From: Diadema antillarum
Lineage: Eukaryota
DNA: 64,000 nucleotides
Direction of reading: 5' to 3'
NCBI RefSeq assembly: GCF_040938485.1
Contig: NW_027272223.1
Span: 1-64,000, forward strand
Position numbers and translations under genes: made by a program. Shown piece by piece: positions 3,096 through 44,796 of the stretch (position 1 is the stretch's first letter; every line of letters begins with the position of its first letter). Under the pieces are notes generated by a model, which was given only the letters and a program-made list of their open reading frames with translations, had not been told where the DNA came from and did not search any database.

Positions 3096-6000
3096 ATGAA
3101 GTGTAAGTTAGAAGTCTGTGATGCTCTCCGTCTATGGTATCTGATGATTACTCTTCACCTAGTGTTCGCTCTTGTTCCAGGCGTGGATGCAGCTGTCGAG
3201 CAATACAGACGACAGGTCACATTGGAGGTGAGGGTACTTTGGTTTGATTTGATTTGATTGATTTGGTTTGATTTTCGATTTCTTCTCCAAAGTATTATAA
3301 AACTGAAATACGCATATAGATAAATCATTAAAGATAATACGAGAGGAATCAATCTAATTGTGTTTATTCACATAGTTAATAACATGTAAGCAAACTTCAC
3401 AATAATTGACTTGTGTCGGCGTATATACTTGGTTCTCGTCCTAACTCTACAGGTAACCATGCATGTGTAATATCTAAATTCAGTATCGTATTTTTAAAGA
3501 CCATAATATCTCGTTGGGCTATTGTATACAGCGTTCTGAATTCTAAATGGAATAAATTCACTATCATTCTGATATGTGTAATATACTCCAAACGCATTAA
3601 AATCTATAAGTTTCTGATCCTGTTTGTTGTAATAATTCCTCCACAATATGCCCTTGGTCAATGTGTGCCTCTCGAACGTCTAATTGTCTTTAACATCAAT
3701 AGCGCTCACTGAAGGGGCAAGCAATTTCAATTCATTTACACTTTCTTTTCTTCCAACATAAGGTCGCACATAATACAAAGTATACCCTATTTTTGAAAAA
3801 TTATACTGTTTAACCATTTTTTAAGAAGTACATGTCATAGAGTATGTTACAAAATGATGTATGAATGATTGTGATGATTATAATGATGAGAGGAACAATG
3901 CCTACTGTGCAATAGTGAAAAAAAAAGATAATAATGGAGAAGAGTAAATCTATACCTCTGTAAGACGTGGATCACTCGAAAAGCAATAGATGTCATGCCA
4001 ACGATTATCCAAAATGTATCTATGAACATTTAGTATAGGTTATACGCCAGTAATAACTGATAAAGGGTAATATAAAAGCATAATACTATTTAGAGCTGTT
4101 GGACAATACTTTTTCTTTCTTTTTTTTTAAGAACAGAGGAAATACATTATACCTAAAATGAGATAACAACGTTACTCCACAGACGCTATTCATTGAGCAG
4201 TGTGCACCATAAAATACATCGACAAAAATAATACTTGCACAGATTATAAGAACACACAGTTAAACACACATACCCCCCCCCAAAAAAAAAAACAGCAACA
4301 AACAAACAAACAAACAAAAAGCACTTATAAACACAAGACGCAATATTGTAACAAGAAGAAAGAACATTTTTATATCACAACACAACGAAGAACAACGTGA
4401 AAAAAAGTCAGGAGCAGAGAAGAAAGAAATTGTGGCTTGTGAACATCCCATTCCGTTGTCACGGAGATGCAACATAGTGTCGTCAGACACTGACCACTGA
4501 ACAATTTGACCAGTTGGTTGCACACACTCAGGCCAGAACTTCCAAAAAAGCTCGTGCCCCAATTTGACCTGCCTCCGCTCAGGTCAACGAAGCAATCCCG
4601 ATCTTTCCAAGCTCAGAAAGGTGATCATAAACAGTGCTCCCGTGAACGGCGTTTTGAATCAACGTTTCAAAACACTGATTCTGAACATAAACACACCCTT
4701 ACATAGACTGTAGTCAGATCTCGGTTGTGATAGATCTTTGTCCACCAAGTGGTCGTTCAAGTCCGTGAGTACACCTGTCAGACAGTGATCAAGATAAAAA
4801 GACCTCATTCCGGAATAGTTCCAGGACAATTACCCCCTGGACAAGAAATTACCCCATATCCTTCCTCTGACCCTAACCCTCTTAATCCCGATCCTGAACC
4901 TAATCCTGACCCTAACCCAAACCCTAATCATATATGATCCTGAACCTAATCCTGTTTTCATTGAGCCTGTGGTGGAAAATGTTCGCTTGCGACGGGTAAA
5001 AAAAGAAAAAAAAATGAACCGTTTGATTGCTCTATAATAGAGCCATGATGATATATATACTTATGGGAGGCCAAAGGAATTTATTAGAATATATCTTTCT
5101 CCTTTTTTTTTTGGGGGGGGGGGGGCTTATTTATTGAAACTTACATTTCAGATCGAATAACTTCAAGAACCTTATAGTAGATCATACCTGTACCAGAAAA
5201 AAGAAGCAAATTTTAAGAGATCATGTGTGCAAATATTAACGCTGTAAAGGCCTACATAGCCAAGTCATCAACAGGCTGACGATGGCTGGTTATCTTTTGC
5301 GAAAATCATTTTGCCATTAGTATAGTCTTGGTTTGAAATATGGAGATTTCATTATCGAGATCATTGTGACTCAAAATCTTAATGAATTGAAAGTATACAC
5401 TCGATACATTGCGCTATTACTATGCATGCAGTAGGTCGATTGAGGATCGATCTCGCGCGAGCAGTTGAGGAACTGCTTCATGTTGTCGAATCCAATTTGA
5501 AGGAGTACGCCCTCTTGAGTGCTGATTATTACAGTGATCGCAACGAAGATCGTTTTCATGGATACTGAGTATAAACTTTCACTTTCATACACAGATAAAA
5601 TGATCATGAACGATAATATGTTGTTTACAGAACCAGCGCATACGGTAAAGACTCCAGCTTTTCCGCTTGGTCGTTTTCTCAAAATCTCCCGCTTTAACGT
5701 TTAGCTTCCTCACAAAATATGAAAAGCGAATAGAAAAGTTTGCACGTATTATACGCAAACGCTCACTTTCATGTCAGATAAAGATAGTATACAAATGATG
5801 CACAGGATAGAGTGCGTTAGTGTAGGCGTAAAGTGCACTCGAGGGTATTTACAATTGTGAAACATGCACGAGGCGAAGCCGAGTGCATGTTGCACTATAC
5901 ATTGTAAATGCCCGAGAGTGAGCTACGCCTCCACTAACGCCACGAAATAATCCTGTGCATCATTTGTTTTATAAAATGGGTCGAAAATTCGAAAACTAAC

Positions 6001-9000
6001 AGCATTTGTCAACGTTTTTCACGTACCTTTGTGGGTCAAGACGTCCGAGGATGTTCGTCCCAAACATTTACGCACGTCGCACTCGGAAATCCCGCACATG
6101 TAAGTACTGTACGTGTAAGCGTACACGTACGCCACATGATTGTTGTGCACAAGAAAGGCCGGCTGCAGCCCGAACGAGAAGTTGTTTTATACAGGATTGA
6201 CAGCGCGTATGGTAGCGCGTGACGCACTTGTAACAACTGATTAAGTGCGCACTGCTAGTGTAAACATTGTGACGTCAGTGACTTTACGCCGTGCATGATA
6301 GTAAAAATTAATGCACGCACACGTGACTCATTTCAGCGCTTCCAATTGGCTACATTCTTGAACCCATTTTATAATAATGAATCACGAACACTCTAACATG
6401 GCCTGCATTTTTTTTTTTTTTTTTTGCGACACTCCGGGATAGTACACGCTATAAGACAAGCTGATTGAATGACTAAAAGAGGTTTGACATCCCGATTACT
6501 ATCGTGCTTCCATGCTACTGCAACAAATCATAATGTAAATGTCAGAAATAGAAGCAGCAATAGTAATGTTGATTACGAATGAAGGGATTTCCCCCCTGCG
6601 AAAAGACTAAGGTCACTTGTTTTCTTTTCTTTTCTTTTTTGTTTTTTGTTTTTGCTGTTACCTATACTGTCGGCAGAGCAATAACTTGTGAGCACAGCAT
6701 ATTGTCGATGAAGCAAATGTCGGCGAAAAAAAAATGGCGCGGAGCATTGTCGCGGGGCATATTTATTGCATTTTTCAAAGCAATTGTCGCCGGAGCATGA
6801 TTATGTCATTGAATCGCTACAGCACCTTCGCTGTCTTTCTTTATATTATCGGTCTTTTTTTCTGTTTCCGTCTCCTCTCTATCTTCAGGAATGCTCGGCT
6901 GGCTCCCCTGGTCCTCCTGGCCCACCGGGACCTCCCGGGGAGCAAGGCGAGCCAGGTGCCCCGAGCAGCGTGACCAAGAACTGGAGGCAGTGTTCGTGGT
7001 GGCAGATTAATGATGGTCAAGACTCCGGCCAAGTCAAGGTGAGGTGACCACAGCGTATGAAACTAATGGCGGGGGGCGGGGGTGCACAAAAAAAAGAAAA
7101 ATTAATAAAACGAAGTATTCGTTGTTGGATATAATGATTCAGACTTACACGTTCATCCATGGTAGTAAATGATACTAAGTAGTTTTGTTTTTTTGTTTCT
7201 TTTTGTCTATATTACTGAAAAGAGGGGGGAGGGGGGGCAGAGGGAGGGCAGAGAGGGCAGAGGAGGGCAAAGCGCGCATATAGGCACAGCCTACGCACGC
7301 AATGCACCCAGCGGCTCATCCGCAGTAAGAAATCTAGAGGTAATGGCCAATCCCAAGATGGTGAACGAGTAACACTTTGGTGACTTTAACACGCACATAT
7401 TATTATCGTTAGAAGCAGTAAGTTATGATCATAGTCCTTCGCAGTGATTTTTTTAACTATGTTTAATTCCTTATAGCTTTGTTTCTAAATGCTCTATAAA
7501 CATGACTTTTATACTTTTTTTCTTTCAAAAAGTTCCCACCGTGATGGGAGGGGGTTTATTCCCCCTCGCACACCCTCCCCCGCTCCCTCGCCGAGGATCT
7601 CACACTGTCACATAAATATGCCCCCGTTAGCAAAGTTATAATCATAGTCATAGTGATTTCTTACTATATGTTTAATTCCCTAGAAATTTGTTTATCAAAT
7701 GCTCTACAAACGCGACTTTTATTCTCTGCTTTTACAAAAACAATCAGCGCAGGAACAAAATGCAGGAGACCGCCATCTTAATTGGAAGCTTGATTTTGAT
7801 GACGGCCTCTGAGAATACAAATTTTTCGATGTCTATAGTTCGTGGGCTGCAAGACTCGTGAGTGTCGAGCTCGTGGGATGACCTTCAGGGGAAGGGATAT
7901 ATCCCTCCCCCTGGAGGTCATTTTGTGTCAGTTTGTGGTCGTCTTCTTCGTAAATTTCTGTCATTTTATTCATTTGAATTTCACAATTCAGCAATCTACT
8001 TGTCTTCGATAGTATTGGTTATGATTTTACGATAGTCTTTGAAAGCAGTCATACATTCCAGAAAATTTGCTGGCCCTTTCAAAAAAAAAAATATCTAGGA
8101 TGTAAATTTTGCTAGGCTTTTCAAACACTACAGATAAAAAGAGTGCCCCCCCAAAAAAAAAAAAATTAATTAATTAATTAATAAATAGATAAATAAATAA
8201 ATACATCGTAGACCTGCACATTCACTCTTCTTGATAATCACACATGTTAACGATACTATAATCTCCCCTGTTTTCTGAAAGAGGGAGGTCAAGTACTTTT
8301 TTTTTCATTATGCTAGAAAACTAAAATTTGCTGAATTCTCTTTAAACTTTCTTATATCGTTTTCCATACGTGACAACACGTTTAATGCTGTAGTCTTGTC
8401 GTCCAGCGATATTATGGCGGCACCAAAACTGTTGAAACTTTTGAACGGATCGTCCAATTTTCGTCAAACTTTACTGATGTGTATCAATATTGCTGCATTC
8501 ACTCAATCCATAGTTATATACTTGGGTTTTATTCTCCTTTATCACAGACATGTAGTTTCACGAAGGAGTATTCCGACACGTACCTTTACGTGGCTTGGTC
8601 CGGCAACCTCCGGGTCGCCACAAACAACCCGGCCTGCTGTCGGTGGTACTTCACTTTCAACAACGCGGAATGCTCCAACCCCAATCGGATTGAAGCTGTC
8701 ACGTACGCCGGTGGATACTCGAGCTACAACCTCCACCGTCCCCGAGTTTTGATGGGTGAGTTGCATTGTCAAAACACGTCAAAGCTGTACAGTAAAACTC
8801 CACCCCATGCTTAAAACAACGGAAGTTTCATAAAAATCTGGGAAAACACTCAGAAAATGACATAATTAATCGGTTTAAGTATGCTCTCCCAGAGCATTAA
8901 AACAGGTCGTAAGCCAGCTCGTAGAGTGTCTATACTTTGCGCATGAGTAGGGGAAAAAGTCATTTGTTCTAGTAGGCACGTTGGGTATTTAAAGTCACTG

Positions 9001-9984
9001 GGATAAGCATCTGTGATTATTCAAGTGATCCTTGTAAATGATGCTTACCAGCACATCCAAGTGACAGCAACAGAGTATTCAGTAAAGCCTGGTATTAATA
9101 GAAAAAAAATTATAATGTATTCAGTGCAAAACAAGTGTTAATTGACTTGCCGTTCTGGTAACCTGGGTCCCGTTTCATAAAACTTGTTATTAGTTACAAC
9201 CGCCACATTTCTCTGACAAATTTGCTCTCAGCCAATCAGATGCAAGGATTTCAGTAGCTTGCAACAACTATCGTAACTTGCTCATTCTTTCTTTGAACTT
9301 GAATTCCATAAATTGATACGTCGGGCAAGCTTAATTATATCATTTGTGTCGCTTTGAAATCGAATAAAGTGCCCAACAAACGGAGAATCGTTCGTTCTTT
9401 ACTGATATAAAGAACGATTACACAACATATTCCTACGCAAGCCAATGGGAGAAAAACTGATATGAGGTGATGTCACTTTTTTCTCCGAAGAAGAAAATAA
9501 TATTTCGTTGCTTTTTGTAATAGTTTTACCTTTCTCATCTTAAAGATATAGTAGACTTGAGTAGACTTTTCCTTTGACATTACCGAACGGTCAGAAATAA
9601 ACATTAGTTGACATGGGACAAAATAAGAAAGTTAATGCATTGCAAAGTTGTCATGATGATTATTTTAAGAAATAATGTAATCGGTGCACGGCAGTGGTAC
9701 CAATACTTGTAATTTAGATGATAAACATAAGATGATAAAACTACAAACAATATTATTTTTTGTTAGTTTCGCGGAGGTAAATATTTGTTTGTTTGTTTGT
9801 TTGTTTGTTTGTTTGTTTGTTTGTTTGTTTGTCAGGCTACTGTAAAGGAATCAGCTCCGGAAGCATCACCGTTGGGTTCTGGGTTGGAGCTTGCAGTGGT
9901 TATGGGAACTATGACTGCTACACCGGTTGGAACAGCGCGAGTCACATCATGATTGAAGAAGTCACGCCATCACCCTACGATTAG
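3096..9984 (+). CDS. CTHRC1: CTHRC1-like secreted collagen triple helix repeat-containing protein, copy 1 (212 aa)
   Basis: Exons 3096-3227, 6889-7038, 8548-8755, 9836-9984, all GT-AG with phases 0/0/1 and an open frame. Signal peptide MKCKLEVCDALRLWYLMITLHLVFALVPGVDA, 7 Gly-X-Y triplets, then NWRQCSW..TCSFTK..WSGNLRV..CCRWYFTFNNAECS..GYCKGI..WVGACS..TGWNSASHIMIEE. This matches the recalled CTHRC1 C-terminal domain (NYKQCSW..ECTFTK..FSGSLRL..CCQRWYFTFNGAECS..TGWNSVSRIIIEE). Confidence 0.92.
4860..4950. repeat. Degenerate CCTAAC/CCTGAC hexamer repeat inside a dispersed repeat family
   Basis: CCCTAACCCT..CCTGAACCTAATCCTGACCCTAACCCAAACCCTAAT; the same string recurs at 13903-13953. Confidence 0.6.
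5791..6374. mobile_element. Non-autonomous element with two adjacent inverted-repeat pairs (family uncertain)
   Basis: Perfect 17 bp IR at 5791-5807 / 5951-5967 and perfect 13 bp IR at 5969-5981 / 6362-6374. The segment is absent from the homologous position of copy 2 intron 1 (about 16960-16985). Confidence 0.55.
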
Positions 9985-10033
9985 ACAAACAAATAAACAA
10001 AAGAAAAACAACAACAAACAAACAGGAAAGATC

Positions 10034-10332
10034 AATTCAATTCAATTCATGCTTTATTTCATTTTTCGAAAAGAACATAAACATTTCACTTTCTTTGGTA
10101 ACAGAGAATAAGGTTGCATAGTCAAAACAAATAAATTGAGAAAAATATAATCGAGGAACCTTGGAATAAGAAATACGTTGTAATGAAAATTGACTGAAGT
10201 GATAAAGACGACATAATACGTAAGACATCGAAAAATGGAGGGACCCACTAAAAAGACAATGCTTGTAGAATGTGGGCCCCTCAAGTACAGAATGTCAATA
10301 GAAATTGACATGGGACAACAGAATGTCAATAG
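10034..10332 (-). mobile_element. 5'-truncated retroposon (LINE/SINE 3' end) in the 3' UTR of copy 1
   Basis: Flanked by AAGATC (10028-10033, 10333-10338). The minus strand ends AATAAAGCATGAATTGAATTGAATTG. It is absent from the aligned 3' UTR of copy 2. Confidence 0.6.
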
Positions 10333-13067
10333 AAGATCGAGAAAATATGAGATATTGTTCTGGTTGTTCATGCACAAGATAGGAACATGTTTATAATAGA
10401 TATAGCTGTTATGCAATGAATGTGTTATGTTATGAATTTAGTAAGATGTATACCCGTGAAAAGCAACAACAGTATTTTTTTTTTATTAAAGTACGTTCAG
10501 ACTAAAAAAGGCAACGAGACTTTTCAATGGTACTGATGCCATTGCTTCCCAACTCTCTAATCGGCGGATTATGCTTAAAGAATTATGCATTTTTCTTATT
10601 TATCCAAGCTGGTATTATCCCCTCCATTTTCCAAAATTTTCATTGCTGCATGAATCGTTACAACCCCGGGACTATTTGGGATACGCAGATAACATAGTAT
10701 TCTTCCTCCGTTCACATCAAGAAGCCATTGATGTCAGCATCTCAATATTGCATTCGTGCCTGTGGCCAAGAATGCTAATTGGGGAAACATGTAAAACTGT
10801 GAATCTTAACAGCTGTATATGAATGAAAATTTATCCGTTGTATTTGTTGATTATATTCAGATTGAATGGTTTTTTGGAAAGTCAGACATTTCGCACTGTA
10901 TATGTAAGACTGATCATTTTCTGCTTTTGGCTGATCCACTGCCGATATTTTACTGACTTGATTATCTAGCCCTCGTAGTCGCTCGCCTTTCAAATCAAAC
11001 CACGCATATTGTATGGTAATATAACAAGATAAAAGAAATCAGAGAACTTTGATGCAAACCAAACCAACAGGGAATGAGACTAGCACTGGTAATGAAGGGG
11101 AGGGGAGGGGGAGAGGTGTACACATTTCATGCACGGCTTTATTTTTGTCTGTCTATATGCAAGGAATTGTTGTCATTATCTCCGTCTATACACATACAAC
11201 ATCGTGCACCATGTACAAATCTCTCTATTCATTTATGAGTTCCTGAGAACTCAAATAAACAATCTATATATAATTGCCGGTCATATCCAATCGTTATATA
11301 GGACACAATGTTACGTACATTCCCTCAAATGAGCCTGCTTTCGGCCCGGATATAAATGAGTTTTCTTTCTTAAACGAATACAAATCCACTGAAAGCACGC
11401 AGTCGTTTTGAAGAAGACACGACATTGCGTCGTGACAGAAAGATAACACAAATCGATAAGGCAGTGTTACCCAGATGTAAAGTCTGACTCCTTTCAATCG
11501 ATAACTCTATGTGGCTATACAATGTCATAAGCTGTATAAATATTTTGCGATAGCCGTGTTTTTTAAGTGACGGATGTATGCTTGTATATAACTGATCTTT
11601 CTCGAGTCTAGTATCCTTCTATGTAGAACTTTATTTTTCCCTTTGGTATTCATGATATTATACGACCAACATTGGTATAGCTTATGAGCGAAGAACTTTT
11701 ATCAGCCAACAGTCAGGACCAAGATATAAAGGATGAAGTATAACTAAGAAGTCTGCGATGTGCTCCGTTTATGGTCTCTGGTCATCATTCTCCAAGTACT
11801 CTGCTCTCTTGTACCCGGCGTGAATGCAGCAGTCGAGCAATACAAACGACAAGTGGTATTGGAGGTAAGTGTTTAAGGATTTCATTTCATTTCTGACTAC
11901 TTTTCTGCAGAATACGAACTAACTTTTATAATGCATTTACATAATAATATTATAATCTAAGGTAAAAAAGATTAAACAAATTGAGCTTATTTCACTGGCA
12001 TGTGTTCACTCACAAAATAATAATATACAGAACAAAAGCAAACAATCTAATTCGTCTCCATATATCGGAGAAAAATACATCGTTGCAAAAGCTTAGTTTA
12101 TATCTCACATCTCGTGTATACTAATCGTCAAAAATAATACTTAAACAGATTATAAAAATGAACAGTAAACAAAAATGCACATGATAATTATTGACACAAG
12201 ACGCAATATTGTAGCAAGAAGAAAGAACACAGTGATATTAAAACGCAACGAAGAACAAGAAGAAGAGATAAGGATTCTTTATTTTTTTATGTTCGTTTGT
12301 TTTTCAGTTGCTAATTAAACCACTAAAGGTTTAATTCAAAATCACATACCTTGTATTTTTCAAAGGAGCCTTACAATACAAGCTCTGCTTCAACCAAGAC
12401 TACCTCATCTTTCTTTCCTCTCAAACTCTACTCTGCCACATTCTTGTATATTTTTGTTTAATTTCTGTACTATGTATATTGCTTTCTTTTGCAAGGATTT
12501 GTGTATTCTTTGTTGATACATCTTTAAGCAGACAAATAAATGAACTTGAACTTGAACTAGAAAATGAGAAGAGAAGAAAGAAATACTGTTTATACACACC
12601 CACTCTATCGCCATGGGGATAAAACGTAGCTGTCAAGCAAAGACGACTGAATAATCTGACTAGCTGGTTGCCACATACTATGGCCATCTCAGTTGTGATA
12701 TATATATATCTTGATTGTGGATGACAGGGATATCTACAAAGTGGTATTTCAAGTCCGTGAGTACACTTAGTGACTATGTCCGACAGTGGTCAAGATAAGA
12801 AGGCCTCACTGTGGAATGGTTCTATAGGACAATTCAATTACCCTATTCAATTCAATCAATCATAGTTTATTTCCAATCAACGAAAATCAAAAACATAGTA
12901 CAAAGTATACATGTCATGAAATAATATTGTTCAAACGTTTGCAAAAGATTCATGTAGTATACGAGATAAATTATAGAACAACATATAATTCATATACACA
13001 ACAATTAGGAGGAACAATGTATAGATACTTCGTGGGCGAGCGGAAAATAAATTCGATTATGGAATAT

Positions 13068-13644
13068 AGGGCTTTTTACACTTGTAAAATTTTGCTTAGC
13101 CCCGGACCAACGGTGGGGCTAAGGGGGGGGGGGGGGCCCTTAGCCCCACCGTTGGTATGGGACTATCCTTAGCCCACTTTCTGTTTACACTCGTTTTTGC
13201 CAAAGTGGGCTAGCCCCACCGATAGTACGGTACTATCTGGCCCTGCAAAATAGCAGGGGTTAGCACCGCAATTGCGGTGCTAGCACCGCAATTGCGGTGC
13301 CAAGCAAGTGAGTGTAAACAGAACGAAAAAATAATCCTGGGCTAAGCGACGGAGACGAAGTCCGACCCTCACTGACCAATCAGAAACGAGGTAATCAAGT
13401 GCTGCCGGTGCGTGCGTGTATTACGTGTACAGTACACAGCGTAATTATGAATATTCATGTGGTTTGGAAAGTCCGGGGCTAAGAAATACGAGTGTAAAAA
13501 GGTCAGTTTTCTCCTTAGTCCCGGACAAGAGATAGTACGGGACTAATTGGCGAGTGTAAAAAGCTGAAAAAATTGGTACGGGACTAACGATAGTCCTGGG
13601 TCAGAGAAAGTCCGGGGTTAAGAAACACAAGTGTAAAAAGCCCT
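13068..13644. mobile_element. MITE with (A)GGGC termini (PIF/Harbinger-like)
   Basis: 15 bp TIR AGGGCTTTTTACACT / AGTGTAAAAAGCCCT, with repeated internal TAGTACGGGACTA and TAGCCCCGGAC motifs. No clean target-site duplication is recognisable. Confidence 0.65.
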
Positions 13645-13953
13645 TTTGCATCCACTAAAAAGCAAAGCTTGTCGGACGTGGATCGCTAGATAAATAATGA
13701 GTAAATGATATACTATTCAAGTATTTGATATAAGTTATTCAAGTCATTTATAACAATATACATGTAGTTATTTGAAGATACATAGGTCGGGAGAAAAAAA
13801 AAAGAATACCAATGCTAATGCCCGGACACTGTTCACTGAACCACGTGTACCGGGAAAATATGACAAGGACAACACATTCGTACACACACCCTATAGATGT
13901 CCCCAACCCTAATCCCAATCCTGAACCTAATCCTGACCCTAACCCAAACCCTT

Positions 13954-14083
13954 NNNNNNNNNNNNNNNNNNNNNNNNNNNNNNNNNNNNNNNNNNNNNNN
14001 NNNNNNNNNNNNNNNNNNNNNNNNNNNNNNNNNNNNNNNNNNNNNNNNNNNNNNNNNNNNNNNNNNNNNNNNNNNNNNNNNNN
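13954..14083. other. Assembly gap (130 N)
   Basis: Run of N next to the CCTAAC hexamer repeat. Confidence 0.98.
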
Positions 14084-14515
14084 ATAACATAACACTTAAG
14101 ACAAACATGTTTCAAAGCACTTTACAATTATCAGAAGAAAACAGACATATAAATCAGCGACGAATACAAATAATCAACAATACGTTGTCATTAGAACTGT
14201 TCTTGAAATAAATGGGTTTTGAGTTTCTTTTTTAAAGTGTCAATGAAGGTGATGGAGGACTGAATAATTAGGAGGGAGATTGTTCCAGAGAGAAGGGGTG
14301 CACAAACGGAGAAAGCAAGGCCACCATAACGGTTGTGGGTGCAAGGGCCAAGTTTGAGCTGAGCTGTAGACGATGATCTGAGGTACATGCGTGTAGCCGG
14401 TCTGGGTTTCGATGAGATTAGATGCGTCAAGTATGAGGGCGAGCGGTTATGGATGATAATGTAGGGGATGATGAGAAAGATATTAAACTTAATTCGTTGT
14501 GGGATTAACAACCAG
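14084..14515 (-). mobile_element. L2-type LINE 3' fragment
   Basis: The minus-strand ORF 14191-14511 contains YLRSSS..RYGGLAFSVCAP..LKKKLKTHLF, a typical L2 ORF2 C-terminus. It is followed by a 3' UTR with TGTAAAGTGCTTTGAAAC. Confidence 0.7.
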
Positions 14516-15178
14516 TGTAGATTGCGGATGACAGGGATATATTCCTCAACCTAATCCTATCACTCACCGGTATTTATGCTGGGGATGTCCTGGGGATGTA
14601 ATTGTCCTGATACGCTCTGGAATTGTTTAATTACTGCTTTGGAATTTTTCATTGAGTCTGTAGTCGAAAGTCTTCTTTTGCGAAGGGTATGATCCGTTTC
14701 ATTGCCCCATAGAGCCAATGATGATATAATTTTAGGAGGACAAAGGAATTAATCAGAATTTATCATATTTTTTTTAACTTATTGAAGCTTGCATTTCATG
14801 TAACTTTAAAGAACATTTAAGGACCCCGCACCTCTACCAGAAAAAAAAAAAAATGATGGTCAGGAGCAAATTTTTAGAGATTTGATGTGTGCCAATATTA
14901 AGGCTGAACCAAACCATGTCATCAACAGGTTCAAGATCGCTGTAGTTAATCTGGTGGGGAGATTATTTTTGCTGTTATAGTATAGCCTTGTTTAGAAATG
15001 TGGTAATTTCATTATAGAGATCATTATCAACCAAAGTCTTTTCAATTTGAAAGTATATACTCGATGTATAGCAGTGCGTCGAGGATAGATCGCGCGAGAG
15101 CAGTTTTTGCGCGGCATTATCGTCAAATCAATTTGAAGGGGTGCACCCTCTATAATTTTCTTGAGTGCTGATATTACA

Positions 15179-16725
15179 GGGCTCACACGGGTAAATAATT
15201 CCCCATAGAGACGTGTGTTAAAATTCAAATTTCAAAAAATTCTGTAAAATAGCTGGGAGAAATGAGTTGTTTCATCTTCACTAACCTGAATAAGTGAGAT
15301 ATACCCTTTTATCCATCAGATTTCCAGGGTGGATTGTTCTGCTTTAATTCTGTCCAAGGGTCGGCAAAGCCAGACTACGAGTTCTTGTCACTCAAAAAAT
15401 CACCTATTTTCTGTACACGTACCCAATGAAATATAGTCCCCTCAAATTCCATCAGAGAAGCTTTCATCTTCCAACCAAAATGCAGTTTGTAGAGGAATCC
15501 ATATGTCTACAGCTATTCAGTTTTTTGCCGAACTACATCATTGATTTTTAATTAATTTTTTTCTTCATTTATTTTGGTGTCTTTGGTACGAATTTGTGAA
15601 GGGGTCTGGGACAGTCCATTTCATTTACAGGTGTGAGCCCTATAGTGGAGGTCATATTTCTTATTTGACTTTTTAACATCACAAATGTGTTTTTGGTGAT
15701 ATTTGCCATTACATCATATGAGAAATTACACATTCAAGGCTTATAAAGCTTTTCAAAGGGGACACTTTTGAAAATCATGGCCTTTGGGTTTTTTTTAATA
15801 CATTCTTGCAGTGTTGATCAGTTCTTCATAAGATAAATACATAGATGCAGGCAGTTATCCTTGATTATGGGGGTGTCATCATCACCTTATTGCCTACAAA
15901 GTACTTGAAGAGACTTTGTTTTGTCAAACAGACTAACTTTATGTATTTTGAGCTGTTTCAGTGGTAGCCAAAACAAAGAAATACATTAGAATAACACAGT
16001 CATTCCAAGTTGTGTGATACTGCTGACTGCTACGTACTAAGATCTAGTACCTGGTACCACAAGAACATAATAAGAAAACAAATTGTCGCAAGGCAGAGTG
16101 GGGGGGGGGTAGAGGAGAGGGGTAGGGGGTATGGAGGAGAAGGGGGAGGGAGGGAGGAAGAGATCTGACACAATACAAGACCAACATACACCAGCAGAGC
16201 TTGTATGGGATGTATACTTCCCATAGACTTGCATGTATTGCGTGCATTCTCTATAGGGCTCACACGGGTAAATAATTCCCCATAGAGACGTGTGTTAAAA
16301 TTCAAATTTCAAAAAAAAATTATGTAAAATAGATGGGAGAAATGAGGTGTTTCATCTTCACTAACCTGAATAAGTGAGATAATACCCTTTCATCCATCAG
16401 ATTTCCAGGGTGGGTTGTTCTGCTTTAATTCTGTCCAAGGGTCCGCAAAGCCAGACTACGAGTTCTTGTCACTCAAAAAATCACCTATTTTCCGCACACG
16501 TACGCAATGAAATATAGTCCCCTCAAATTCCATCAGAGAAGCTTTCATCTTCTAACCAAAATGCAGTTTGTAGAGGAATCCATACTCAATGTCTACAGCT
16601 ATTCAGTTTTTTGCCAAACTACATCATTGATCTTTAATTAATATTTTCTTCATTTATTTTGGTATCTTTGGTACGAATTTGTGAAGGGGTCTGGGACAGT
16701 CCATTTTATTTACAGGTGTGAGCCC
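15179..16725. mobile_element. Compound insertion: two direct copies of a ~465 bp MITE (15179-15640, 16256-16725) around a 615 bp spacer
   Basis: Each unit has GGGCTCACAC...GTGTGAGCCC termini. The outer flanks are TACA/TACA and the inner flanks TATA/TATA. The paralogous intron of copy 1 has a single TACA (5530-5533) with matching flanks. Confidence 0.8.
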
Positions 16726-18746
16726 TACAGTGATCGCAAGGAGGATCTTTTTCATGGATATAAGCTTTCACTTTATTATAAATACAGATAAAATAACTGC
16801 AAGAACAATATGTTTACAGAACCAGCGCATACTGCAGAGACTTCAGGTCTTCCGCGTTAAGGACATTCTCTCAAAATCTCCAGCTTAACGTTAGCTTTCT
16901 CACAAAATATGAATATCATACAGAATAGTTTGCACGTATAGTACACTAACGCTCACTTTCATGGCAGAGGATCACAAATATTATAACATGACCTGCATTT
17001 ATTTGTGAGCGCTATGGAAAATAAGCTGATTGAACGATAAATGAGGTTGATATCCCGTTTTGATCGCACTTTTATGTTACTGCAACTAATCAAAATAATG
17101 TAAAGGTCAGAAATAGGATAAGCAGCAATATTAATGTTGATAAAAGAATGGTGGGATTTTTTTTTTTCCTGCGGAAAGACTGAAGTCACTTGTTTTCTTA
17201 TCTTATCTTTTTTTCTTTTCTGTTTTGTTTGCCTATTTGTTTGTTTGTTTGTTTGTTTGTTTTTCCTTTTGCTATTACCTGTACTGTCGGCAGAGCAATT
17301 ATCCGCGAAGTGTCGGCGGAGCAAATGTCGCGGAGTATTGTCGTGGGGTATTTTTGTCGCAATTTTCGGAGTTATGTTGTCGGCGGTGCTACAGCACCTT
17401 CGCTGTCTTTCTTTATACAACGATTATCGGGTTAGTTTTTTTTTTCTCTCTCTCTTCCCGTCTCCTCTCTATATGCAGGAATGCACAGCGGGCTCCCCTG
17501 GTCCTCCTGGACCACCGGGGCCGCCCGGGGAGCAAGGCGAGCCAGGTGCCCCGAGCAGCGTGTCCAAGAACTGGAGGCAGTGTTCGTGGTGGCAGATTAA
17601 TGACGGTCAAGATTCCGGCCAAGTCAAGGTGAGGCGACCACAACGTAACTAGAAAACAAACAAAAACTGCTGAATTCTTTGTACTTCCTTTATGCGTGAC
17701 GTCACGAAATGTTGTAGTCTTCTCTCCCAGCGTTGCCGGCACCGAAAATTTGAAAATTCATAACTTTTGAACGGATCGTTCCATTTTCCTCAAACTGTAC
17801 TGATGTGTAGGCCTCTTAATATTGTTACATTCACTCATTGATAAAACCTGGGTTTTTATTCTCGTTGAACACAGACATGTAGTTTCACCAAGGAGTATTC
17901 CGACACGTACCTATACGTGGCTTGGTCTGGCAACCTCCGGGTCGCAACAAACAACCCGGCCTGTTGTCGGTGGTACTTCACTTTCAACAACGCGGAATGC
18001 TCCAACCCCAATCGGATTGAAGCAGTCACGTACGCCGCTGGATACTCGAGCTACAACCTTCACCGTCCCCGAGTTTTGATGGGTGAGCTATATTGTCAAA
18101 CAAGTCAAAAATGTACCGTAAAACTCCATCCCATAATGCATGCTTCAAGCGACGTTATAACATAAAACAGAACAACGAAAGTTTCTTTAAAATCCGGGAA
18201 AATACTCAGAAAACGACCGTATCATGGATTCTATTTTTTTTTTTTCGTGCGATTCAAAGGCAGGGTAAGAAATTTAATTATCCTGAATTTGACTACCTTT
18301 TTTATTTACGTTTAAGTTTTTATCATTTATTAACTATATTTTTTTGCACAATTCTTGGTTTGTTTGTTTGCCAGGCTATTGTAAAGGGATCAGTGCCGGG
18401 AGTATCACCGTTGGGTTCTGGGTCGGAGCTTGCAGTGGTTATGGGAACTATGACTGCGCCACTGGTTGGAATAGCGCAAGCCACATTATGATTGAAGAAG
18501 TCACTCCATCACCCTATGATTAGAAACACGGACAAACGAACAAACACAAAAGGAAGGATCGAGAAAATAATTATGAGATATCGTAATAGTGGTTTATCTA
18601 TAAACGTAGAGGGCGTCAATGGAGTGAGCACACAATTTTTTGCTTGTCTCAAAAAGGCATCTAATTTTTCCCAAATCGAGTCAAAAGGACACATTCTGTG
18701 GAACTCACGTAAAGCCTGCTTTGAAACATCGACGTAAACTTTCAAA

Positions 18747-19730
18747 ATGGACCAGCAGCTTCAGAAAAGACCAAAGAGGCTGGCCGCCACGAAACCGAAA
18801 AACTACGGCACAACTCACACCATCCGCAAGTCGCCTGTTACTAACTCGAAAAGCCCGCCAAATTCAAATACGTTGCCCGGGTCTGCTGCCGTCGCAAGCA
18901 CCTGTAGCCCTGGAGCTGAACCAACGCCCACACCTACGGCGCAGCAGGAAGACGGCGCTTCGTACATCGCTGAACCTGATATTCAAGACAACATGGCCGC
19001 CATGGACGACTCTGAAGTCCCGCTCGCACCACCTGATATCTCCGACTCCATCCTGTCTCCTATGTCCCTGAAGCTTGATGCATTCTTCACATCTACAACA
19101 GAAAAATTTGAACGCATGATCAGAAACGCGGTGGATAGCTTCATTTCAAAGCTCAGTGACTTGGAAGGAAAAATTGGTGCCTCCTTGGAGTTTGAGCGGG
19201 AAAGAATCGACAACCTGCAAACAAATCAGTCCAAGCTGGAGGAGAGAATGGAGAAAATGGAAAGAGAAATGGAAGAAATGAGAGCCAACGTGAGCAGAAA
19301 CGCAGCAGCTGCAAACAAGAGTGAGCGGTTCCTGAGGAGGAATAACTTCCGTCTTGTTGGAATACAGGAGGTTCCATTGGGTCAACGGGAAAATTGTGTC
19401 GACATCGTAGAGGAAGTCCTGCGAGAGAAATTTGATATGAGCTGCAAGGTGGAAAGAGCCCACAGAGATGGACGACGATCCGAAGGCAAGCCGAGACATA
19501 TCCTGGTCAAGTTGCTCTCCTACAGGCAGAAAGTAGATGTGATGAAACGTGCGCGTGAAGTCCTGAAAAACGAGCCATATTTTATGGTTGATGATCTCAC
19601 CCCAAGCGACCTACAGGAAAAACAGAAACATGTCAAGAAAGTCCAAGACCTGTACAAACAAGGTACTAAACTTCGATTTTTTGCAGGAAAGTGGCGCCAA
19701 ACCGGTGGTGTCCCATTTAATTTTGAGTGA
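18747..19730 (+). CDS. LINE ORF1 protein (coiled coil + L1-type RRM/CTD, 327 aa)
   Basis: Heptad-rich segment followed by RRNNFRLVGIQE..VERAHR..PRHILVKL..DDLT, the motif series of L1/transposase-22-like ORF1p. Confidence 0.85.
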   Translation: MDQQLQKRPKRLAATKPKNYGTTHTIRKSPVTNSKSPPNSNTLPGSAAVASTCSPGAEPTPTPTAQQEDGASYIAEPDIQDNMAAMDDSEVPLAPPDISDSILSPMSLKLDAFFTSTTEKFERMIRNAVDSFISKLSDLEGKIGASLEFERERIDNLQTNQSKLEERMEKMEREMEEMRANVSRNAAAANKSERFLRRNNFRLVGIQEVPLGQRENCVDIVEEVLREKFDMSCKVERAHRDGRRSEGKPRHILVKLLSYRQKVDVMKRAREVLKNEPYFMVDDLTPSDLQEKQKHVKKVQDLYKQGTKLRFFAGKWRQTGGVPFNFE

Positions 19731-22700
19731 GGATTCTCTTTACACCACTTAAACTTACCTTACTAAATGTAGGTTTAAATTTTCAAGACAGGCAGGAATC
19801 CGTTTAACAACCATGTATTGAGTGTATAATTCTGATAGGGAATCAGAATTGTATATAAAAGTTGACGCTGAAAACTTATGTTAAAATTTCTTATAAGACA
19901 AACCGACAGTTTTAAAAATAACTGGTACTGATGCAGTGCTTATATACTCACCTTTTTTGTCCTCAATCACTTTTGGGTGATTGAAAAGTGATTTTGAAAT
20001 AGAAGGATTTTTTTTTTCTATAACATGGAGTGATAAAGTAGAAAAATTACAAATTTACCGTATTTGTTAAAAAAAAAAACTTTTGATCTTCATGCCATGG
20101 CATGATTGCTTATTTTTTTTATCTCTCCCATTCTTGTTGCATTGATAGGAACTGAATAGTTGTTGTTTTTTTTTTTGGATAAATTAGCCTGTCTGTAATC
20201 TTAAGATATAATAAAACAGTCACGTTTAATATGAACGTATTCATATTCTGTAAGTATTATTACTAACGGTAAAAACGGTGACCTATAAACGATTATCTAT
20301 AATTTGAATAAGCCAAATGTTTATTAATTTCCGATTCTCTTTCGTTAAAAGAAACAATAACCAGAGTTAAATACGGATGCTCGGACATTTGATATAAATT
20401 GTGTAATTTGTTTTATGGAGTTTTGATATTGCATCCAATCCGTTGTACAAGCTCAAGCTGGTTATACACTAGCTGCTTGGCATTCAGATAATTTCCTGAC
20501 ACCATCCTATCATGGCAACATTTACTGAATAGAATGGAGTTACTGCATGGATATCTGACACAATATGACAGGTGTACGTAAAATTTTCAGTCATATTAAA
20601 GGAACATTCACTATGATTGTTGTTATAGTTGTTCTATGATGTAAATTCATAAAACATTCTAGATAATGTACATGATTTTTTTTTCGGAGGGCTTCTGCAA
20701 GCGCTATGTTTGATAACATACGCTTGTAATTAGCTGATTTGTGTTTTTTTTCTTTGAGTCATTACAGTCGAAATGCAAACAACCATAATCGCCTCCTACA
20801 ATGTATTTGGCCATCCAGGACCGACTATACAGTCTCTCAATCTGTTCGCCCCCATCAGTATTTATTTATTTTTTTTTTTTGCATAATTTTGCTAGGTTGT
20901 TCTCATGTATCCATTGAGATCATCGCAAAAAGAAAAAGAAGCTATTTCCCACTTGTTACAACATGCTGTGTTTTTCACTATCCTTTTTTATTTACAGCTG
21001 CATGACGGCAGGTGCTCGTTATTGAGTCACTATAGCCCTGTTGTTTTGATCCTTGGTATTCCATCATAGCTAAAACGAAACGGTTGTTTAAAAGAAATGG
21101 ATCAAACAGGACACAAATTTTATAACTGTTGTTGACCATCACTCAAATAACAAGCGATACACCTTTGCAAAGTTTTCACGGTGACTTCATTTTTTTTTCT
21201 TTCTCTCAATGGAAAAAAAAATATATCAAGTTTTATGAGCTATAAATGAATTTCTTTAGAAGAGCTGTTTTTATATAAACTGTTCCTCTTTCTCATTTAT
21301 AGATGCAATAACGGCTGTAAATTTGAATTTCCATTTTGTTGCACCCATACAACGTCTATCTGTTTGATGTAAGTTGTATGTATAGCAGTGTCCTAGTTGA
21401 CTTGAAGTTATAAATAGGAATACTCATCTTCTACTACACCATTATACGGAATAGTTCTTTAGTTGACTCGTAAAACTGATGTGCATGTGCAATCTATAAA
21501 GCAAGTCACATAACGCACGTTTATGACTAGGTCGTCTACGTGTACATTACGAATGTCATTTACGAATATTTCTCGCTTTTTTTTCTCAATGACATGTCTA
21601 CTTTCATTTATGCAGAAACGTTAGCCATCAATCATTTTCTTTTTCCCCGCAACTCGAATATATAATGTTTCTTTTCCATACACGAGCGCAACTATATTTA
21701 TAGTTATGGTAGACATGATCCACGTTTTAGTGAACTATTGTACAAAGCGACTTACTGCCGATTTTCTCCGTAACTTTGTTTTCTCAAAGTTTTCCATGGT
21801 GTTCAGTAAAGCTGGATAAATAGGCCACAGAAATGTCCGTCCTCAATTATGATATTTGTATCACACGATATTTACAGAACGCCCTCGGAAATTTGCACTT
21901 TGTTCATTCTTAATTTCCTTTTCATTTAAGTAGTATTTTTACTTATACGATCATTACTGGTCCCTGTCATTGATGATTATCTACTTACCTTGGCAACGCA
22001 ATCGGCTCTTTAATCAGTGATTATGAACCCTACCCCATAGTTTTTGTCTGCCGTGGTTGCCCCTCGTGACACTGCAACGACGGGGTCCCTCTGAAATGTA
22101 TTGTCATACGGTTCCTTTGTTTGTTAGAATTTTGTTCGAGAATGCGGGCATGTGAGTTCGATTTGCAAATTCTTGTTTCGTGTAAGCCTCTGCTTATAAA
22201 CAACCCAGTATTTGCATGGGTCGTTGTATCATGGACTCATATATAATCAAACGATCTGATTTTTTTCTCATTACTATTATCCTTATAAGTTTGCATCACA
22301 ATGTCAACCTGCCACACACACACACGCATCTCATAGTTATGCAGTTCTGTTATAATGTTAATTTGAACAGATTGCAGTTGTGTTAAAATGTTATATAATA
22401 GAGATCTGTGTACGGTTGTCTGACACCGGGAAATTTTTTCCAGTTATGTTCTGAGTCTGTAAACACTCTCCTAAAACTTCTGGCTTTGTAGCTCTTTTCT
22501 TTCTCAATAGTGATTCGTTCATCGACCCCAAGAATGTTCACGGCTACTCTTCATTTGTTTGAGCTTACGTGTGGGTAGGTTCTATTTGTATGCTGTTCAC
22601 ATTAATGGAGTCGTGGTCACTTACCCTGTGTCCCGGTATGCAGCCTACTACATTGGGATAAAGAACCCTTTGTTTATAATGTGAACAGTCATGTATTATA

Positions 22701-23192
22701 TGTATGCATGACTGTCCCATTAAGTTATCCAGTTAAGTTTTATTCCCACTACATATGATTCTGATTACCTCACAATAATCAAGGAATATAGTTTGATATA
22801 TTTGATTTCTTCCCTTTTTTGCGTATACATGACTACCTTTTCCGTGTTTGCTACTGTTTACTAAAAAAAAAAAACCCGTTAACGGTGTTTAGTTGTCCTT
22901 TTTGTCCCCTACTTTGAAAATTTATCTGATTTGAGACTAGCAATGTTCAATTCTCATGTTACGACACGATTTGCGTATGTATGTATGTTGTCTTTCTGTC
23001 CTTCTTTCTCTGTCATCTTCCTTATGTTTGTCCTCTCTCACCTATCTTCTTTTTCAGAATTCTATGTTTATGTGTATTTGCCTACTCGCTGTTCGATTCG
23101 CGAAACCGGAATTGTTTGTGCTTCACCTACATGTATGTCAAAATATCTTATACCTCAACCCCGGCAGTTGATATGCTTTCATTTTGGATTTT

Positions 23193-26100: not shown

Positions 26101-26306
26101 TTGCAAGGAATCAATTTTTCCATAATTATCCCACCAGACAATCTTCTGAGTTTCATCTACCTCTTCTGAGAACATTATTGGCTCAGAATACATTTATATA
26201 CACAGGCCCTAGATTCTGGAATTCATTAAGTAGCGAAATAAAAAATTCTCCTTCTTTGTATTCCTTTAAGCGTAAGTTGAAATCCTTTCTGTTAAACCCT
26301 CTCTGA
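23193..26306 (+). pseudogene. LINE ORF2 (APE endonuclease + reverse transcriptase), inactivated
   Basis: Motifs LHLNISS, GLTETWL, VYRPP, GDFNIDL, TDHFP (APE) and YRPISLL, DFSKAFD, GVPQGSLLGP, FADD (RT). It is broken by a frameshift near 24330, a compensating frameshift near 24545 and TGG>TAG at 25740-25742 (DKFS*RPH versus DEHLTWKE in the second LINE). Confidence 0.9.

Positions 26307-37002: not shown

Positions 37003-37048
<46 letters not shown>

Positions 37049-43330: not shown

Positions 43331-43382
<52 letters not shown>

Positions 43383-44447: not shown

Positions 44448-44479
<32 letters not shown>

Positions 44480-44751: not shown

Positions 44752-44796
<45 letters not shown>

What the first reader, a model, noticed from the sequence alone, without database searches (positions are those of the whole stretch)
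10340..18523. Copy 2 is a 5'-copy-3 / 3'-copy-1 chimera, the anti-Lepore signature of unequal crossing over
Seen: the segment upstream of copy 2 (about 10340-11730) aligns with the segment upstream of copy 3 (about 26888-28360). Exon 1 of copy 2 differs from copy 3 at only 7 of 132 nt, and intron 1 follows copy 3 until about 12103 (AGCTTAGTTTATAT). From about 12125 (AAAAATAATACTT..CAGATTATAA, compare about 4222) it follows copy 1, through exon 3 (8 of 208 differences to copy 1, versus about 36 between copies 1 and 3). Inference: a crossover in intron 1 between an ancestral upstream and downstream gene produced A - (5'B/3'A) - B, putting one paralogue's promoter and signal peptide on the other's mature domain.
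Basis: partly seen in the sequence, partly recalled or inferred. Interest (0 to 1): 0.7.

Follow-up and report, generated by a model that had tools for sequence, protein, structure and literature searches.

The report
Chimeric CTHRC1-like gene from tandem duplication
One of four neighbouring sea-urchin CTHRC1-like genes really is a hybrid, with its front end from the downstream neighbour and its body from the upstream neighbour, made by one old tandem duplication: a tidy but textbook way for a gene family to grow.

Summary
The window holds four tandem CTHRC1-like genes of four exons each.

**The chimera**
- Copy 2 follows copy 3 from about 1.4 kb upstream, through exon 1, to 12103.
- From 12124 it follows copy 1, through 5.3 kb of intron 1 and on to exon 3 and the downstream spacer.
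- The joint lies in continuous sequence, 1.85 kb before the N gap, which is intronic.
- The same joint is on a second contig, C33, the other haplotype, at 98% identity.
- In C33 the two spacers (copy 1 to 2, copy 2 to 3) align end to end at 84%.
- Both halves have similar neutral divergence (p about 0.15 against 0.17; exon 3 dS 0.17-0.19).

This fits one old tandem duplication of about 7.8 kb, running from intron 1 of gene A to intron 1 of gene B. That is the anti-Lepore architecture.

**Caveats**
- The parental introns show no similarity at the joint, so a homology-driven crossover is not shown.
- Exon 2 cannot tell the copies apart. Exon 4 of copy 2 is the outlier, and exon 1 plus the proximal promoter is homogenised with copy 3. 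Later gene conversion explains these.
- This haplotype's copy 2 has a TAA at codon 5. The C33 allele is intact.

The case is ordinary. Earlier notes of this scan describe similar CTHRC1 arrays and patchworks on other DNA of this genome.

The parts
3096..9984 (+). Copy 1 (gene A), CTHRC1-like. Exons 3096-3227, 6889-7038, 8548-8755, 9836-9984.
   Evidence: Open exons with AG/GT borders. Pfam CTHRC1_C PF25815 on exons 2-4 and Collagen on exon 2.
11733..18523 (+). Copy 2, the chimeric gene. Exons 11733-11864 (B-type), 17479-17628, 17875-18082 (A-type), 18375-18523.
   Evidence: Splice sites are intact. Summed exon by exon over exons 2-4, dN/dS against copy 1 is 0.04-0.05.
28362..38955 (+). Copy 3 (gene B). 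Exons 28362-28493, 35949-36098, 37421-37628, 38807-38955.
42970..48411 (+). Copy 4, used as outgroup. Exon 1 about 42970-43077 (weak match), then 45480-45629, 47413-47620, 48263-48411.
4218..12103 (.). First copy of the duplicated unit: 3' part of A, the spacer, and the 5' part of the B-type gene.
   Evidence: Collinear chain of hits to 12124-28748. Repeated on the C33 haplotype.
12124..28748 (.). Second copy of the duplicated unit, enlarged by later transposon insertions.
12104..12123 (+). The only novel joint. It is B-type up to 12103 and A-type from 12124, possibly from about 12110.
   Evidence: The interval is identical in both haplotypes.
11745..11747 (+). TAA at codon 5 of copy 2 (TTA in c1, c3 and the C33 allele of c2). 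It is part of a cluster of three changes within 7 nt that is unique to this contig.
13954..14083 (.). Assembly gap inside intron 1 of copy 2, between a young repeat on its left and an old repeat on its right.
11511..11806 (+). Tract homogenised with copy 3 (28147-28435), covering the proximal promoter/5'UTR and most of exon 1. Difference is 3-5% against 15-20% in the flanks.
9816..10006 (+). Exon 4 of copy 1 plus about 20 nt on each side, close to copy 3 (38787-38977; 92.7% over the whole tract, 8/149 differences within exon 4). A likely c1/c3 conversion tract.
10034..10332 (.). Haplotype-specific 299-nt insertion in the c1-c2 spacer, with duplicated target AAGATC. The site is empty in C33.
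18604..26883 (+). Haplotype-specific 8.28-kb LINE insertion in the c2-c3 spacer. It has open frames at 18747-19730, 23184-24479 and 24540-25742 and an A-rich tail. The site is empty in C33.
12271..12562 (.). Dispersed repeat inserted in the A-type part of intron 1 of copy 2, 85-90% identical to many loci.
13300..13650 (.). Young high-copy repeat, 98-99% identical to 40 scored loci out of more than 1800 candidates. Judged from spacing, it is probably absent from C33.
15175..16732 (.). Pair of 94% identical direct repeats (15175-15647 and 16252-16732) and the sequence between them. This is an insertion relative to copy 1 (5530-5587).

Best explanation
Copy 2 is a real hybrid CTHRC1-like gene. 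It was made by one old tandem duplication of about 7.8 kb that started in intron 1 of the upstream gene A (now copy 1) and ended in intron 1 of the downstream gene B (now copy 3). The duplication created one new joint (12104-12123). That joint places B's promoter, 5'UTR and exon 1 (signal peptide plus about 13 mature residues) and 239 nt of B's intron in front of A's intron 1 remainder, exons 2-4 and 3' flank. It also left two copies of the A-B spacer. This is the architecture of an anti-Lepore product. However, the parental sequences are unrelated at the joint, so the exchange was more likely illegitimate (non-homologous or microhomology-mediated unequal exchange, or a replication error) than a crossover guided by paralogue homology. 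The hybrid then stayed under purifying selection. Short gene conversions later homogenised exon 1 and the proximal promoter with copy 3, and exon 4 between copies 1 and 3. Transposons enlarged the second unit. In the haplotype of this window the hybrid has since acquired a nonsense codon at codon 5, while the other haplotype keeps an intact frame. Shown: the joint, the collinearity, the duplicated spacer, the divergences, the allele difference. Inferred: single event, mechanism of exchange, direction of conversions, function. The confidence given is for the single tandem duplication that made the chimera; that the exchange was illegitimate and not homology-guided I hold at about 0.6.
For: The switch of partner is at 12103/12124. 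A collinear chain links 4218-12103 to 12124-28748 with no inversion. The same joint is on contig C33 at 98% over 1401 nt. C33 is the other haplotype: the assembly statistics match the uncollapsed D. antillarum hifiasm v0.4 assembly, in which both haplotypes are retained (PMC13511894). In C33 the two spacers (1430 and 1531 nt) align from stop codon to ATG at 84%, against 41-44% for shuffles. The unmatched stretches in the window are haplotype-specific transposon insertions with target duplications. Noncoding p-distance is 0.13 for the 5' half (0.15-0.17 without the homogenised tract) and 0.165-0.18 for the 3' half, in both haplotypes. Exon 3 dS c1-c2 is 0.17-0.19, while A-B exon 3 dS is 1.4-1.7. 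Site patterns are 23:2:2 in exon 1 and 1:31:3 in exon 3, Fisher p 1.3e-12. A- and B-type introns show no similarity at the joint, z about 0, against z > 30 for each half and its donor. dN/dS c1-c2 is 0.04-0.05. The assembly holds no other paralogue that could be a donor.
Against: The 5' half is somewhat less diverged than the 3' half (0.13-0.15 against 0.165-0.18), so the equal age is approximate. Conversion or promoter constraint has to be invoked to explain the difference. Exon 4 contradicts the simple model: c1-c2 has 16/149 differences, and synonymous differences are significantly more than in exon 3 (p 0.007-0.0008). ML trees put c2 on a long branch among mixed c1/c3 alleles. Exon 2 is a three-way tie. 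Single-exon AU tests lack power: for exon 3, a tree holding c2+c3 together is not rejected (p 0.15). No species without copy 2 could be examined, and no reads could be laid, so expression, the TAA and the gap are not verified at read level. The absence of homology at the joint today does not prove its absence at the time of the event.
Confidence: 0.85

Rival explanations
1. Classical homologous unequal crossing-over, the true Lepore/anti-Lepore mechanism. Misaligned A and B paired through their similarity and crossed over at equivalent positions of intron 1. The homology at the joint has since decayed. (This is a rival for the mechanism only; it gives the same product as the best explanation.)
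For: It gives the same A - B/A - B product with a duplicated spacer. Exons and exon-proximal introns of A and B are alignable: the first ~100 nt of intron 1 and the 5' part of intron 3. Exchange between these paralogues clearly does occur, as the conversion tracts show.
Against: There is no detectable A/B similarity on either side of the joint (z about 0). The joint is 990 nt from exon 1 in A and 239-255 nt in B, and only about 270 nt of the A side is an identifiable old repeat. A-B synonymous divergence is about 0.5-1.7 in exons 1 and 3. Introns were therefore probably already unalignable when the duplicates (K about 0.2) arose, whereas homologous exchange needs long near-identical stretches (established knowledge).
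Confidence: 0.2
2. Copy 2 began as a whole-gene duplicate of copy 1 (or of copy 3), and one end was later overwritten by a long gene-conversion tract from the other neighbour.
For: Short conversion tracts are demonstrably active in this cluster. The 5' half is slightly younger-looking than the 3' half.
Against: The tract would have to be at least 1.75 kb (5') or at least 6.4 kb (3'). It would have to end in sequence with no homology between donor and acceptor and extend through the entire spacer, which is equivalent to the duplication itself. No second duplication joint is seen in either spacer. Outside the 300-nt homogenised tract the two halves have nearly the same divergence.
Confidence: 0.06
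3. Assembly artefact: a false join of a copy-3-like 5' piece to a copy-1-like 3' piece, for instance at the N gap or by mixing haplotypes.
For: There is a gap in intron 1 of copy 2, and the assembly retains both haplotypes and was gap-patched (PMC13511894).
Against: The joint lies 1.85 kb before the gap in uninterrupted sequence. Matches to copy 1 already begin before the gap. An independently assembled 4.1-Mb contig carries the same joint at 98% identity, and both gap flanks lie on it in order.
Confidence: 0.02

Closest known systems
Haemoglobin anti-Lepore fusion genes (beta-delta hybrids such as Hb Miyada or P-Nilotic, flanked by normal delta and beta). Established knowledge, recalled from memory.
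   Same: The order is A, a 5'B/3'A hybrid, then B. There is a single switch point and a duplicated intergenic spacer, and the hybrid is driven by B's promoter.
   Different: The globin crossovers lie inside about 93% identical coding sequence at equivalent positions. Here the joint is in intron 1, between sequences with no detectable similarity and at different distances from exon 1. The event is also old (K about 0.2), present in both haplotypes and since overlaid by conversion. It is not a rare recent variant.
Chimeric genes formed by tandem duplications that span parts of two neighbouring genes, as catalogued in Drosophila by Rogers, Bedford and Hartl 2009. Recalled from memory, not checked here.
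   Same: A tandem duplication with breakpoints inside two adjacent genes yields one new hybrid gene at the joint and leaves both parents intact. No homology is needed at the breakpoints.
   Different: Here the two parents are themselves paralogues of one family. The hybrid therefore encodes a normal family member and not a new domain combination.
Cthrc1 gene family expansions (Leclere et al. 2020, PMC7058181)
   Same: The proteins are secreted, with a short collagen repeat and the CTHRC1 C-terminal domain. The paper reports lineage-specific diversification, including in an echinoderm, and tandemly duplicated paralogues on one scaffold in cnidarians.
   Different: The paper does not mention gene conversion, and its only two uses of 'tandem' concern duplications in cnidarians (term search). 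The chimeric origin of one member is additional detail.
Concerted evolution / gene-conversion mosaics in tandem families. Earlier notes of this scan describe them for CTHRC1-like, GPCR and UGT clusters of the same genome.
   Same: There are short exon-centred tracts of discordant similarity, covering exon 1 plus promoter, exon 2 and exon 4. Some variants are shared between loci.
   Different: The main 5'/3' switch here is not a conversion tract. It is a structural joint with a duplicated spacer.

Membership tests
CTHRC1 (collagen triple helix repeat containing 1) family | CTHRC1 C-terminal domain (Pfam PF25815) | tested here: met
   Tested exon by exon on copy 1. Exon 3 scores 69.3 bits and exon 4 48.6 bits (cut-off 27). 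Exon 2 scores 21.2 bits for the first 23 profile positions. Together they cover profile positions 1-137. Copies 2-4 differ by only a few residues.
CTHRC1 (collagen triple helix repeat containing 1) family | Short Gly-X-Y collagen repeat before the C-terminal domain | tested here: met
   GSPGPPGPPGPPGEQGEPGAP (seven triplets) can be read in exon 2 of all copies. The Pfam Collagen match has E 3.7e-5 at 23.9 bits, below the 27.2 cut-off, as expected for so short a repeat.
CTHRC1 (collagen triple helix repeat containing 1) family | N-terminal signal peptide (secreted protein) | not tested
   Exon 1 encodes a hydrophobic stretch ending in VPGVNA/VDA. No signal-peptide predictor was available, so this is read by eye only.
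Anti-Lepore-type product of unequal exchange | A hybrid 5'B/3'A gene lying between intact A and B | tested here: met
Anti-Lepore-type product of unequal exchange | The whole A-B spacer is present twice, on either side of the hybrid | tested here: met
   In C33 the spacers of 1430 and 1531 nt align end to end at 84%. In the window the same holds once two haplotype-specific insertions are set aside.
Anti-Lepore-type product of unequal exchange | Both halves of the hybrid date from one event (equal divergence from their donors) | tested here: inconclusive
   p is 0.13-0.17 for the 5' half and 0.165-0.18 for the 3' half, and exon 3 dS is 0.17-0.19. The values are close but not identical, and conversion near exon 1 confounds the comparison.
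Anti-Lepore-type product of unequal exchange | Crossover within homologous sequence, at equivalent positions of the two parents | tested here: inconclusive
   There is no present-day similarity between A and B at the joint (z about 0), and the offsets from exon 1 are unequal (990 against 239-255 nt). Decay since the event cannot be excluded without an outgroup. For this reason I file it as 'same architecture', not as a proven homologous crossover.
Interlocus gene conversion mosaic | Short tracts much more similar than their flanks, with a discordant nearest relative | tested here: met
   Exon 1 plus 220 nt upstream: c2-c3 is 3-5% and dS 0.03, against 15-20% in the flanks. The exon-1 variants AVS and IIL are shared crosswise between c2 and c3 of the two haplotypes. 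Exon 4: c1-c3 has 8/149 differences while the introns are unalignable, with five shared derived sites against copy 4.

The most novel reading that the evidence does not exclude
The cluster may be a live recombination system and not a fossil. Copies 2 and 3 still exchange exon-1/promoter variants between loci within the population. The hybrid also segregates as an intact allele and a nonsense allele. If so, this would be a natural case in which a promoter-swapped paralogue is being lost or kept under balancing conditions, in a species that recently went through mass mortality. It would allow direct measurement of conversion against crossover in an echinoderm gene array.
Probability: 0.15. Interest if true: 0.4.

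Novelty: new member of a known kind. Interest (0 to 1): 0.27.

Why it matters
This is a clean, fully resolved example of how a tandem family gains a member with a swapped promoter and signal-peptide exon. There is one joint, a duplicated spacer and matching ages, and later conversions then partly hide the history. It also gives a practical warning. Exon-only analysis would place the 'breakpoint' in exon 2 and would misread exon 4, and only intron collinearity gives the true joint. For annotators of this assembly, copy 2 on this contig is a nonsense allele while its allele on C33 is intact. The eight genes on the two contigs are four loci times two haplotypes. None of this changes what is known about gene-family evolution.

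Tried and rejected

**Solved structures.** The PDB sequence search with exon 3 gave only chance hits to ribosomal protein L33 (E >= 0.3).

**Other donors.** A search for another paralogue that could have supplied exon 4 or the 5' end of copy 2 found only the 4 + 4 copies on C1335 and C33. Two more distant clusters have about 50% protein identity.

**The nonsense variant elsewhere.** A search for the TAA-bearing exon-1 variant in the rest of the genome found it only in this window.

**Homology at the joint.** No similarity between A- and B-type introns was found at the joint. A ~270-nt old repeat on the A side does not equalise the offsets from exon 1.

**Exon-only tests.** AU tests on single exons have too little power: for exon 3, p is 0.15 for c2+c3 held together. 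Maximum chi-square on exonic sites alone puts the switch inside exon 2. I reject that placement because 5.3 kb of intron before exon 2 is already A-type. Polarising with copy 4 shows that half of those exon-2 sites are changes private to copy 1.

All family scans and dN/dS counts were done exon by exon, so full-length protein searches and look-ups in other species were not made.
- I did not read C33:499508-499999, the stretch opposite the N gap.
- The large protein searches were not used, because Pfam settled the family.
Full report
**What is in the window**

A self-comparison shows four head-to-tail gene copies. Each has four exons of 132 (108 in the weak copy-4 match), 150, 208 and 149 nt, with AG/GT borders.
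- Copy 1: exons 3096-3227, 6889-7038, 8548-8755, 9836-9984.
- Copy 2: exons 11733-11864, 17479-17628, 17875-18082, 18375-18523.
- Copy 3: exons 28362-28493, 35949-36098, 37421-37628, 38807-38955.
- Copy 4: exon 1 about 42970-43077 (weak match), then 45480-45629, 47413-47620, 48263-48411.

Scanned exon by exon, the products match the CTHRC1 C-terminal domain (PF25815). Exon 3 scores 69.3 bits and exon 4 48.6 bits, and exon 2 matches the start of the profile. Exon 2 also carries a seven-triplet Gly-X-Y repeat.

The genome has 1,754,659,819 bases in 2,963 contigs. This matches the uncollapsed hifiasm v0.4 assembly of the sea urchin Diadema antillarum (1,754,675,526 bp, 2,964 contigs, heterozygosity 2.52%). 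That assembly's authors later showed that it retains both haplotypes (PMC13511894). The identification rests on these statistics, not on a direct test.

**The observation**

| Exon | c1-c2 | c1-c3 | c2-c3 | Length (nt) |
|---|---|---|---|---|
| 1 | 28 | 28 | 7 | 132 |
| 2 | 9 | 9 | 6 | 150 |
| 3 | 8 | 36 | 38 | 208 |
| 4 | 16 | 8 | 16 | 149 |

- The region upstream of copy 2 (10376-11732) aligns with that of copy 3 (26886-28361). The alignment continues through exon 1 and 239 nt of intron 1, and stops at AGCTTAGTTTATAT, which ends at 12103.
- From 12124 copy 2 aligns with intron 1 of copy 1 at 4218.
- A chain of collinear hits follows, through the rest of intron 1, exon 2, intron 2, exon 3, intron 3, exon 4 and 26 nt beyond the stop, to 18549 <-> 10011.
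- Copy 3's introns match neither neighbour, except within about 30 nt of exons and in the first ~130 nt of intron 3.
- Each half of copy 2 around the joint matches its donor at z = 31-33 against shuffles, and matches the other parent at z about 0-2.
- Informative sites (c2=c3: c1=c2: c1=c3) are 23:2:2 in exon 1 and 1:31:3 in exon 3. Fisher p is 1.3e-12 and the permutation p of the maximum chi-square is <= 1e-4.

**The gap**

The N run 13954-14083 lies in intron 1 of copy 2, 1.85 kb after the joint and 3.4 kb before exon 2, so frame is not an issue. Matches to copy 1 already begin before the gap (12124-12274, 12518-12834, 13847-13952) and continue in order after it, from 14646.

Both flanks map to one 4.1-Mb contig, C33, on the same strand and in order (12700 <-> 500303, 14084 <-> 499507). 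The distance between those two anchors is about 590 nt shorter in C33. This fits a young high-copy repeat at about 13300-13650 (98-99% identical to the loci scored, out of more than 1,800 candidates) being specific to this haplotype.

**A second haplotype as an independent replicate**

C33 carries the same four genes on its minus strand. It is 95-98% identical to the window outside transposon indels, which agrees with the published heterozygosity.
- It has the same joint: 98% identity over 11300-12700. Partner matches end at query 804 (window 12103) for copy 3 and begin at query 825 (window 12124) for copy 1. The 20-nt interval is identical. This excludes an assembly artefact.
- It explains the parts of the window that did not fit. 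Stretches 10034-10332 (target duplication AAGATC) and 18604-26883 (an 8.28-kb LINE with an A-rich tail) are insertions absent from C33.
- With those insertions removed, the spacer from copy 1 to copy 2 (1430 nt) and the spacer from copy 2 to copy 3 (1531 nt) align from stop codon to ATG at 84%, against 41-44% for shuffles.

A duplicated spacer on both sides of the hybrid is the specific prediction of A - B/A - B by one unequal exchange.

**One event or two?**

With exons masked, p-distances from local alignments were measured in both haplotypes.
- The 5' half gives 0.132-0.133.
- The 3' half gives 0.165-0.18.

A four-sequence alignment of the 5' half shows a ~300-nt tract (11511-11806: proximal promoter, 5'UTR and most of exon 1) at only 3-5%. 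The rest is at 15-20%. Without that tract the 5' half is at about 0.15-0.17.

Exon 3 dS between copies 1 and 2 is 0.17-0.19. Between either of them and copy 3 it is 1.4-1.7. The two halves are therefore of about the same age, roughly eight times the allelic divergence, and the parents A and B were already ancient paralogues. I read this as a single event, and that reading is an inference.

**Mechanism**

The product has the anti-Lepore architecture, but I could not find the hallmark of a homologous crossover.
- A-type sequence before the joint and B-type sequence before it are unrelated, and the same holds after the joint (z about 0).
- The joint lies 990 nt from exon 1 in A, in both haplotypes, and 239-255 nt from exon 1 in B. 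Only about 270 nt of the A side is a recognisable old repeat.
- No shared transposon sits at the two breakpoints.
- Given the A-B synonymous divergence, the introns were probably unalignable when the event happened.

I therefore favour an illegitimate unequal exchange or a replication-based tandem duplication with breakpoints in two neighbouring paralogues. From memory, this is the route catalogued for chimeric genes in Drosophila. A homology-guided crossover keeps about 0.2. After about 17-20% divergence, microhomology at the joint cannot be judged.

**What the simple model does not explain**

- **Exon 2** is a three-way tie (dS 0.20-0.28 for all pairs). Of six c2=c3 sites, three are changes private to copy 1 when polarised with copy 4. 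Exon 2 of A and B was probably already homogenised at the time of the duplication. Exon-only breakpoint mapping wrongly puts the switch inside exon 2.
- **Exon 4** departs from the model. Copy 2 is equally far from copies 1 and 3 (16/149), while those two differ at 8. Synonymous c1-c2 differences are significantly more frequent than in exon 3 (p 0.007-0.0008). Five of the twelve c2-private sites carry the copy-4 state, so copies 1 and 3 share derived bases. ML trees mix c1 and c3 alleles and put copy 2 on a long branch. No other donor exists in the assembly. The most economical reading is that copy 2 keeps the old A-type exon 4 and that copies 1 and 3 have exchanged this exon since (tract about 9816-10006 <-> 38787-38977).
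- **Exon 1.** The window's copy 2 is closer to C33's copy 3 (4 differences) than to its own allele (7). The window's copy 3 is closest to C33's copy 2 (2 differences). The AVS and IIL variants are shared crosswise. Conversion between copies 2 and 3 is therefore recent or ongoing, and part of the '7 of 132' reflects that and not the age of the chimera.

**State of the hybrid gene**

- Exons 2-4 are open and all splice sites are intact in both haplotypes.
- dN/dS against copy 1 is 0.04-0.05, summed exon by exon, so the hybrid has been under purifying selection.
- In this window codon 5 is TAA (11745-11747) where every other copy has TTA. It sits within three changes in 7 nt that occur nowhere else in the assembly. 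There is no in-frame ATG downstream in exon 1. The C33 allele is intact.
- The window therefore carries a null allele, or a local sequence error.
- Exon 1 contributes the signal peptide and about 13 mature residues, as read by eye. The mature domains of copies 1-3 differ at only a handful of residues. The main consequence of the chimera is therefore regulatory: B's promoter drives an A-type body.

**Comparison and verdict**

Lineage-specific expansion of Cthrc1 genes, including in an echinoderm, is published, and so are tandem paralogues on one scaffold in cnidarians (PMC7058181). Hybrid genes from unequal exchange, and conversion mosaics in tandem arrays, are textbook. Earlier notes of this scan report similar CTHRC1 arrays and patchworks elsewhere in this genome.

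It is a new member of a known kind, of modest interest.

Noticed in passing
window 11745-11747 (with 11740 and 11744): Copy 2 of this haplotype has TAA at codon 5 inside a cluster of three changes within 7 nt (Cys3Tyr, a silent change, Leu5stop). The cluster is unique in the assembly, and the C33 allele is intact. It is either a segregating null allele or a local error.
   Followed up: partly
window exon 1 of c2 (11733-11864) and c3 (28362-28493); C33:501139-501270 and 493397-493528: Exon-1 variants (AVS against IIL in the signal peptide) are shared crosswise between copies 2 and 3 of the two haplotypes. This points to recent or ongoing exchange between the two loci.
   Followed up: partly
window 18604-26883: An 8.28-kb LINE with open frames and an A-rich tail is present in this haplotype and absent from C33, where the site is clean and empty (...TCTATAA|GATAGG...). 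It is a polymorphic, probably recent insertion.
   Followed up: partly
window 10034-10332: A 299-nt insertion with target duplication AAGATC is absent from C33. It lies about 45 nt from the position in the other spacer copy that is equivalent to the LINE insertion site.
   Followed up: partly
window 29622-34586 and 34836-35604 (intron 1 of copy 3): About 5 kb is present here and replaced by about 350 nt in C33. Next to it is a 109-nt tandem repeat of about 7 units, against about 5 units in C33.
   Followed up: no
window 13300-13650: A repeat 98-99% identical to the 40 loci scored, out of more than 1,800 candidates. This is a very young and probably active element family. It sits just left of the assembly gap.
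   Followed up: no
window 37421-37628 (exon 3 of copy 3): Exon 3 of copy 3 is as far from copies 1 and 2 (dS 1.4-1.7) as copy 4 is, or farther. Its exons 2 and 4 are only 5-6% away. Copy 3 is itself a mosaic of old and homogenised exons.
   Followed up: partly
C33:502701-517472 (copy 1 of the other haplotype): Copy 1 spans about 14.8 kb in C33 against 6.9 kb in the window, because of extra intronic sequence. Its exon 4 differs from the window's allele at 7 of 149 sites, as much as from copy 3.
   Followed up: no
window 48494-48682: A second assembly gap lies 82 nt after the stop codon of copy 4.
   Followed up: no
G000 contigs C168 (2.68-2.72 Mb) and C833 (0.16-0.20 Mb): A second, more distant CTHRC1-like array (45-53% identity in exon 3) is again present on two contigs, presumably the two haplotypes.
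   Followed up: no
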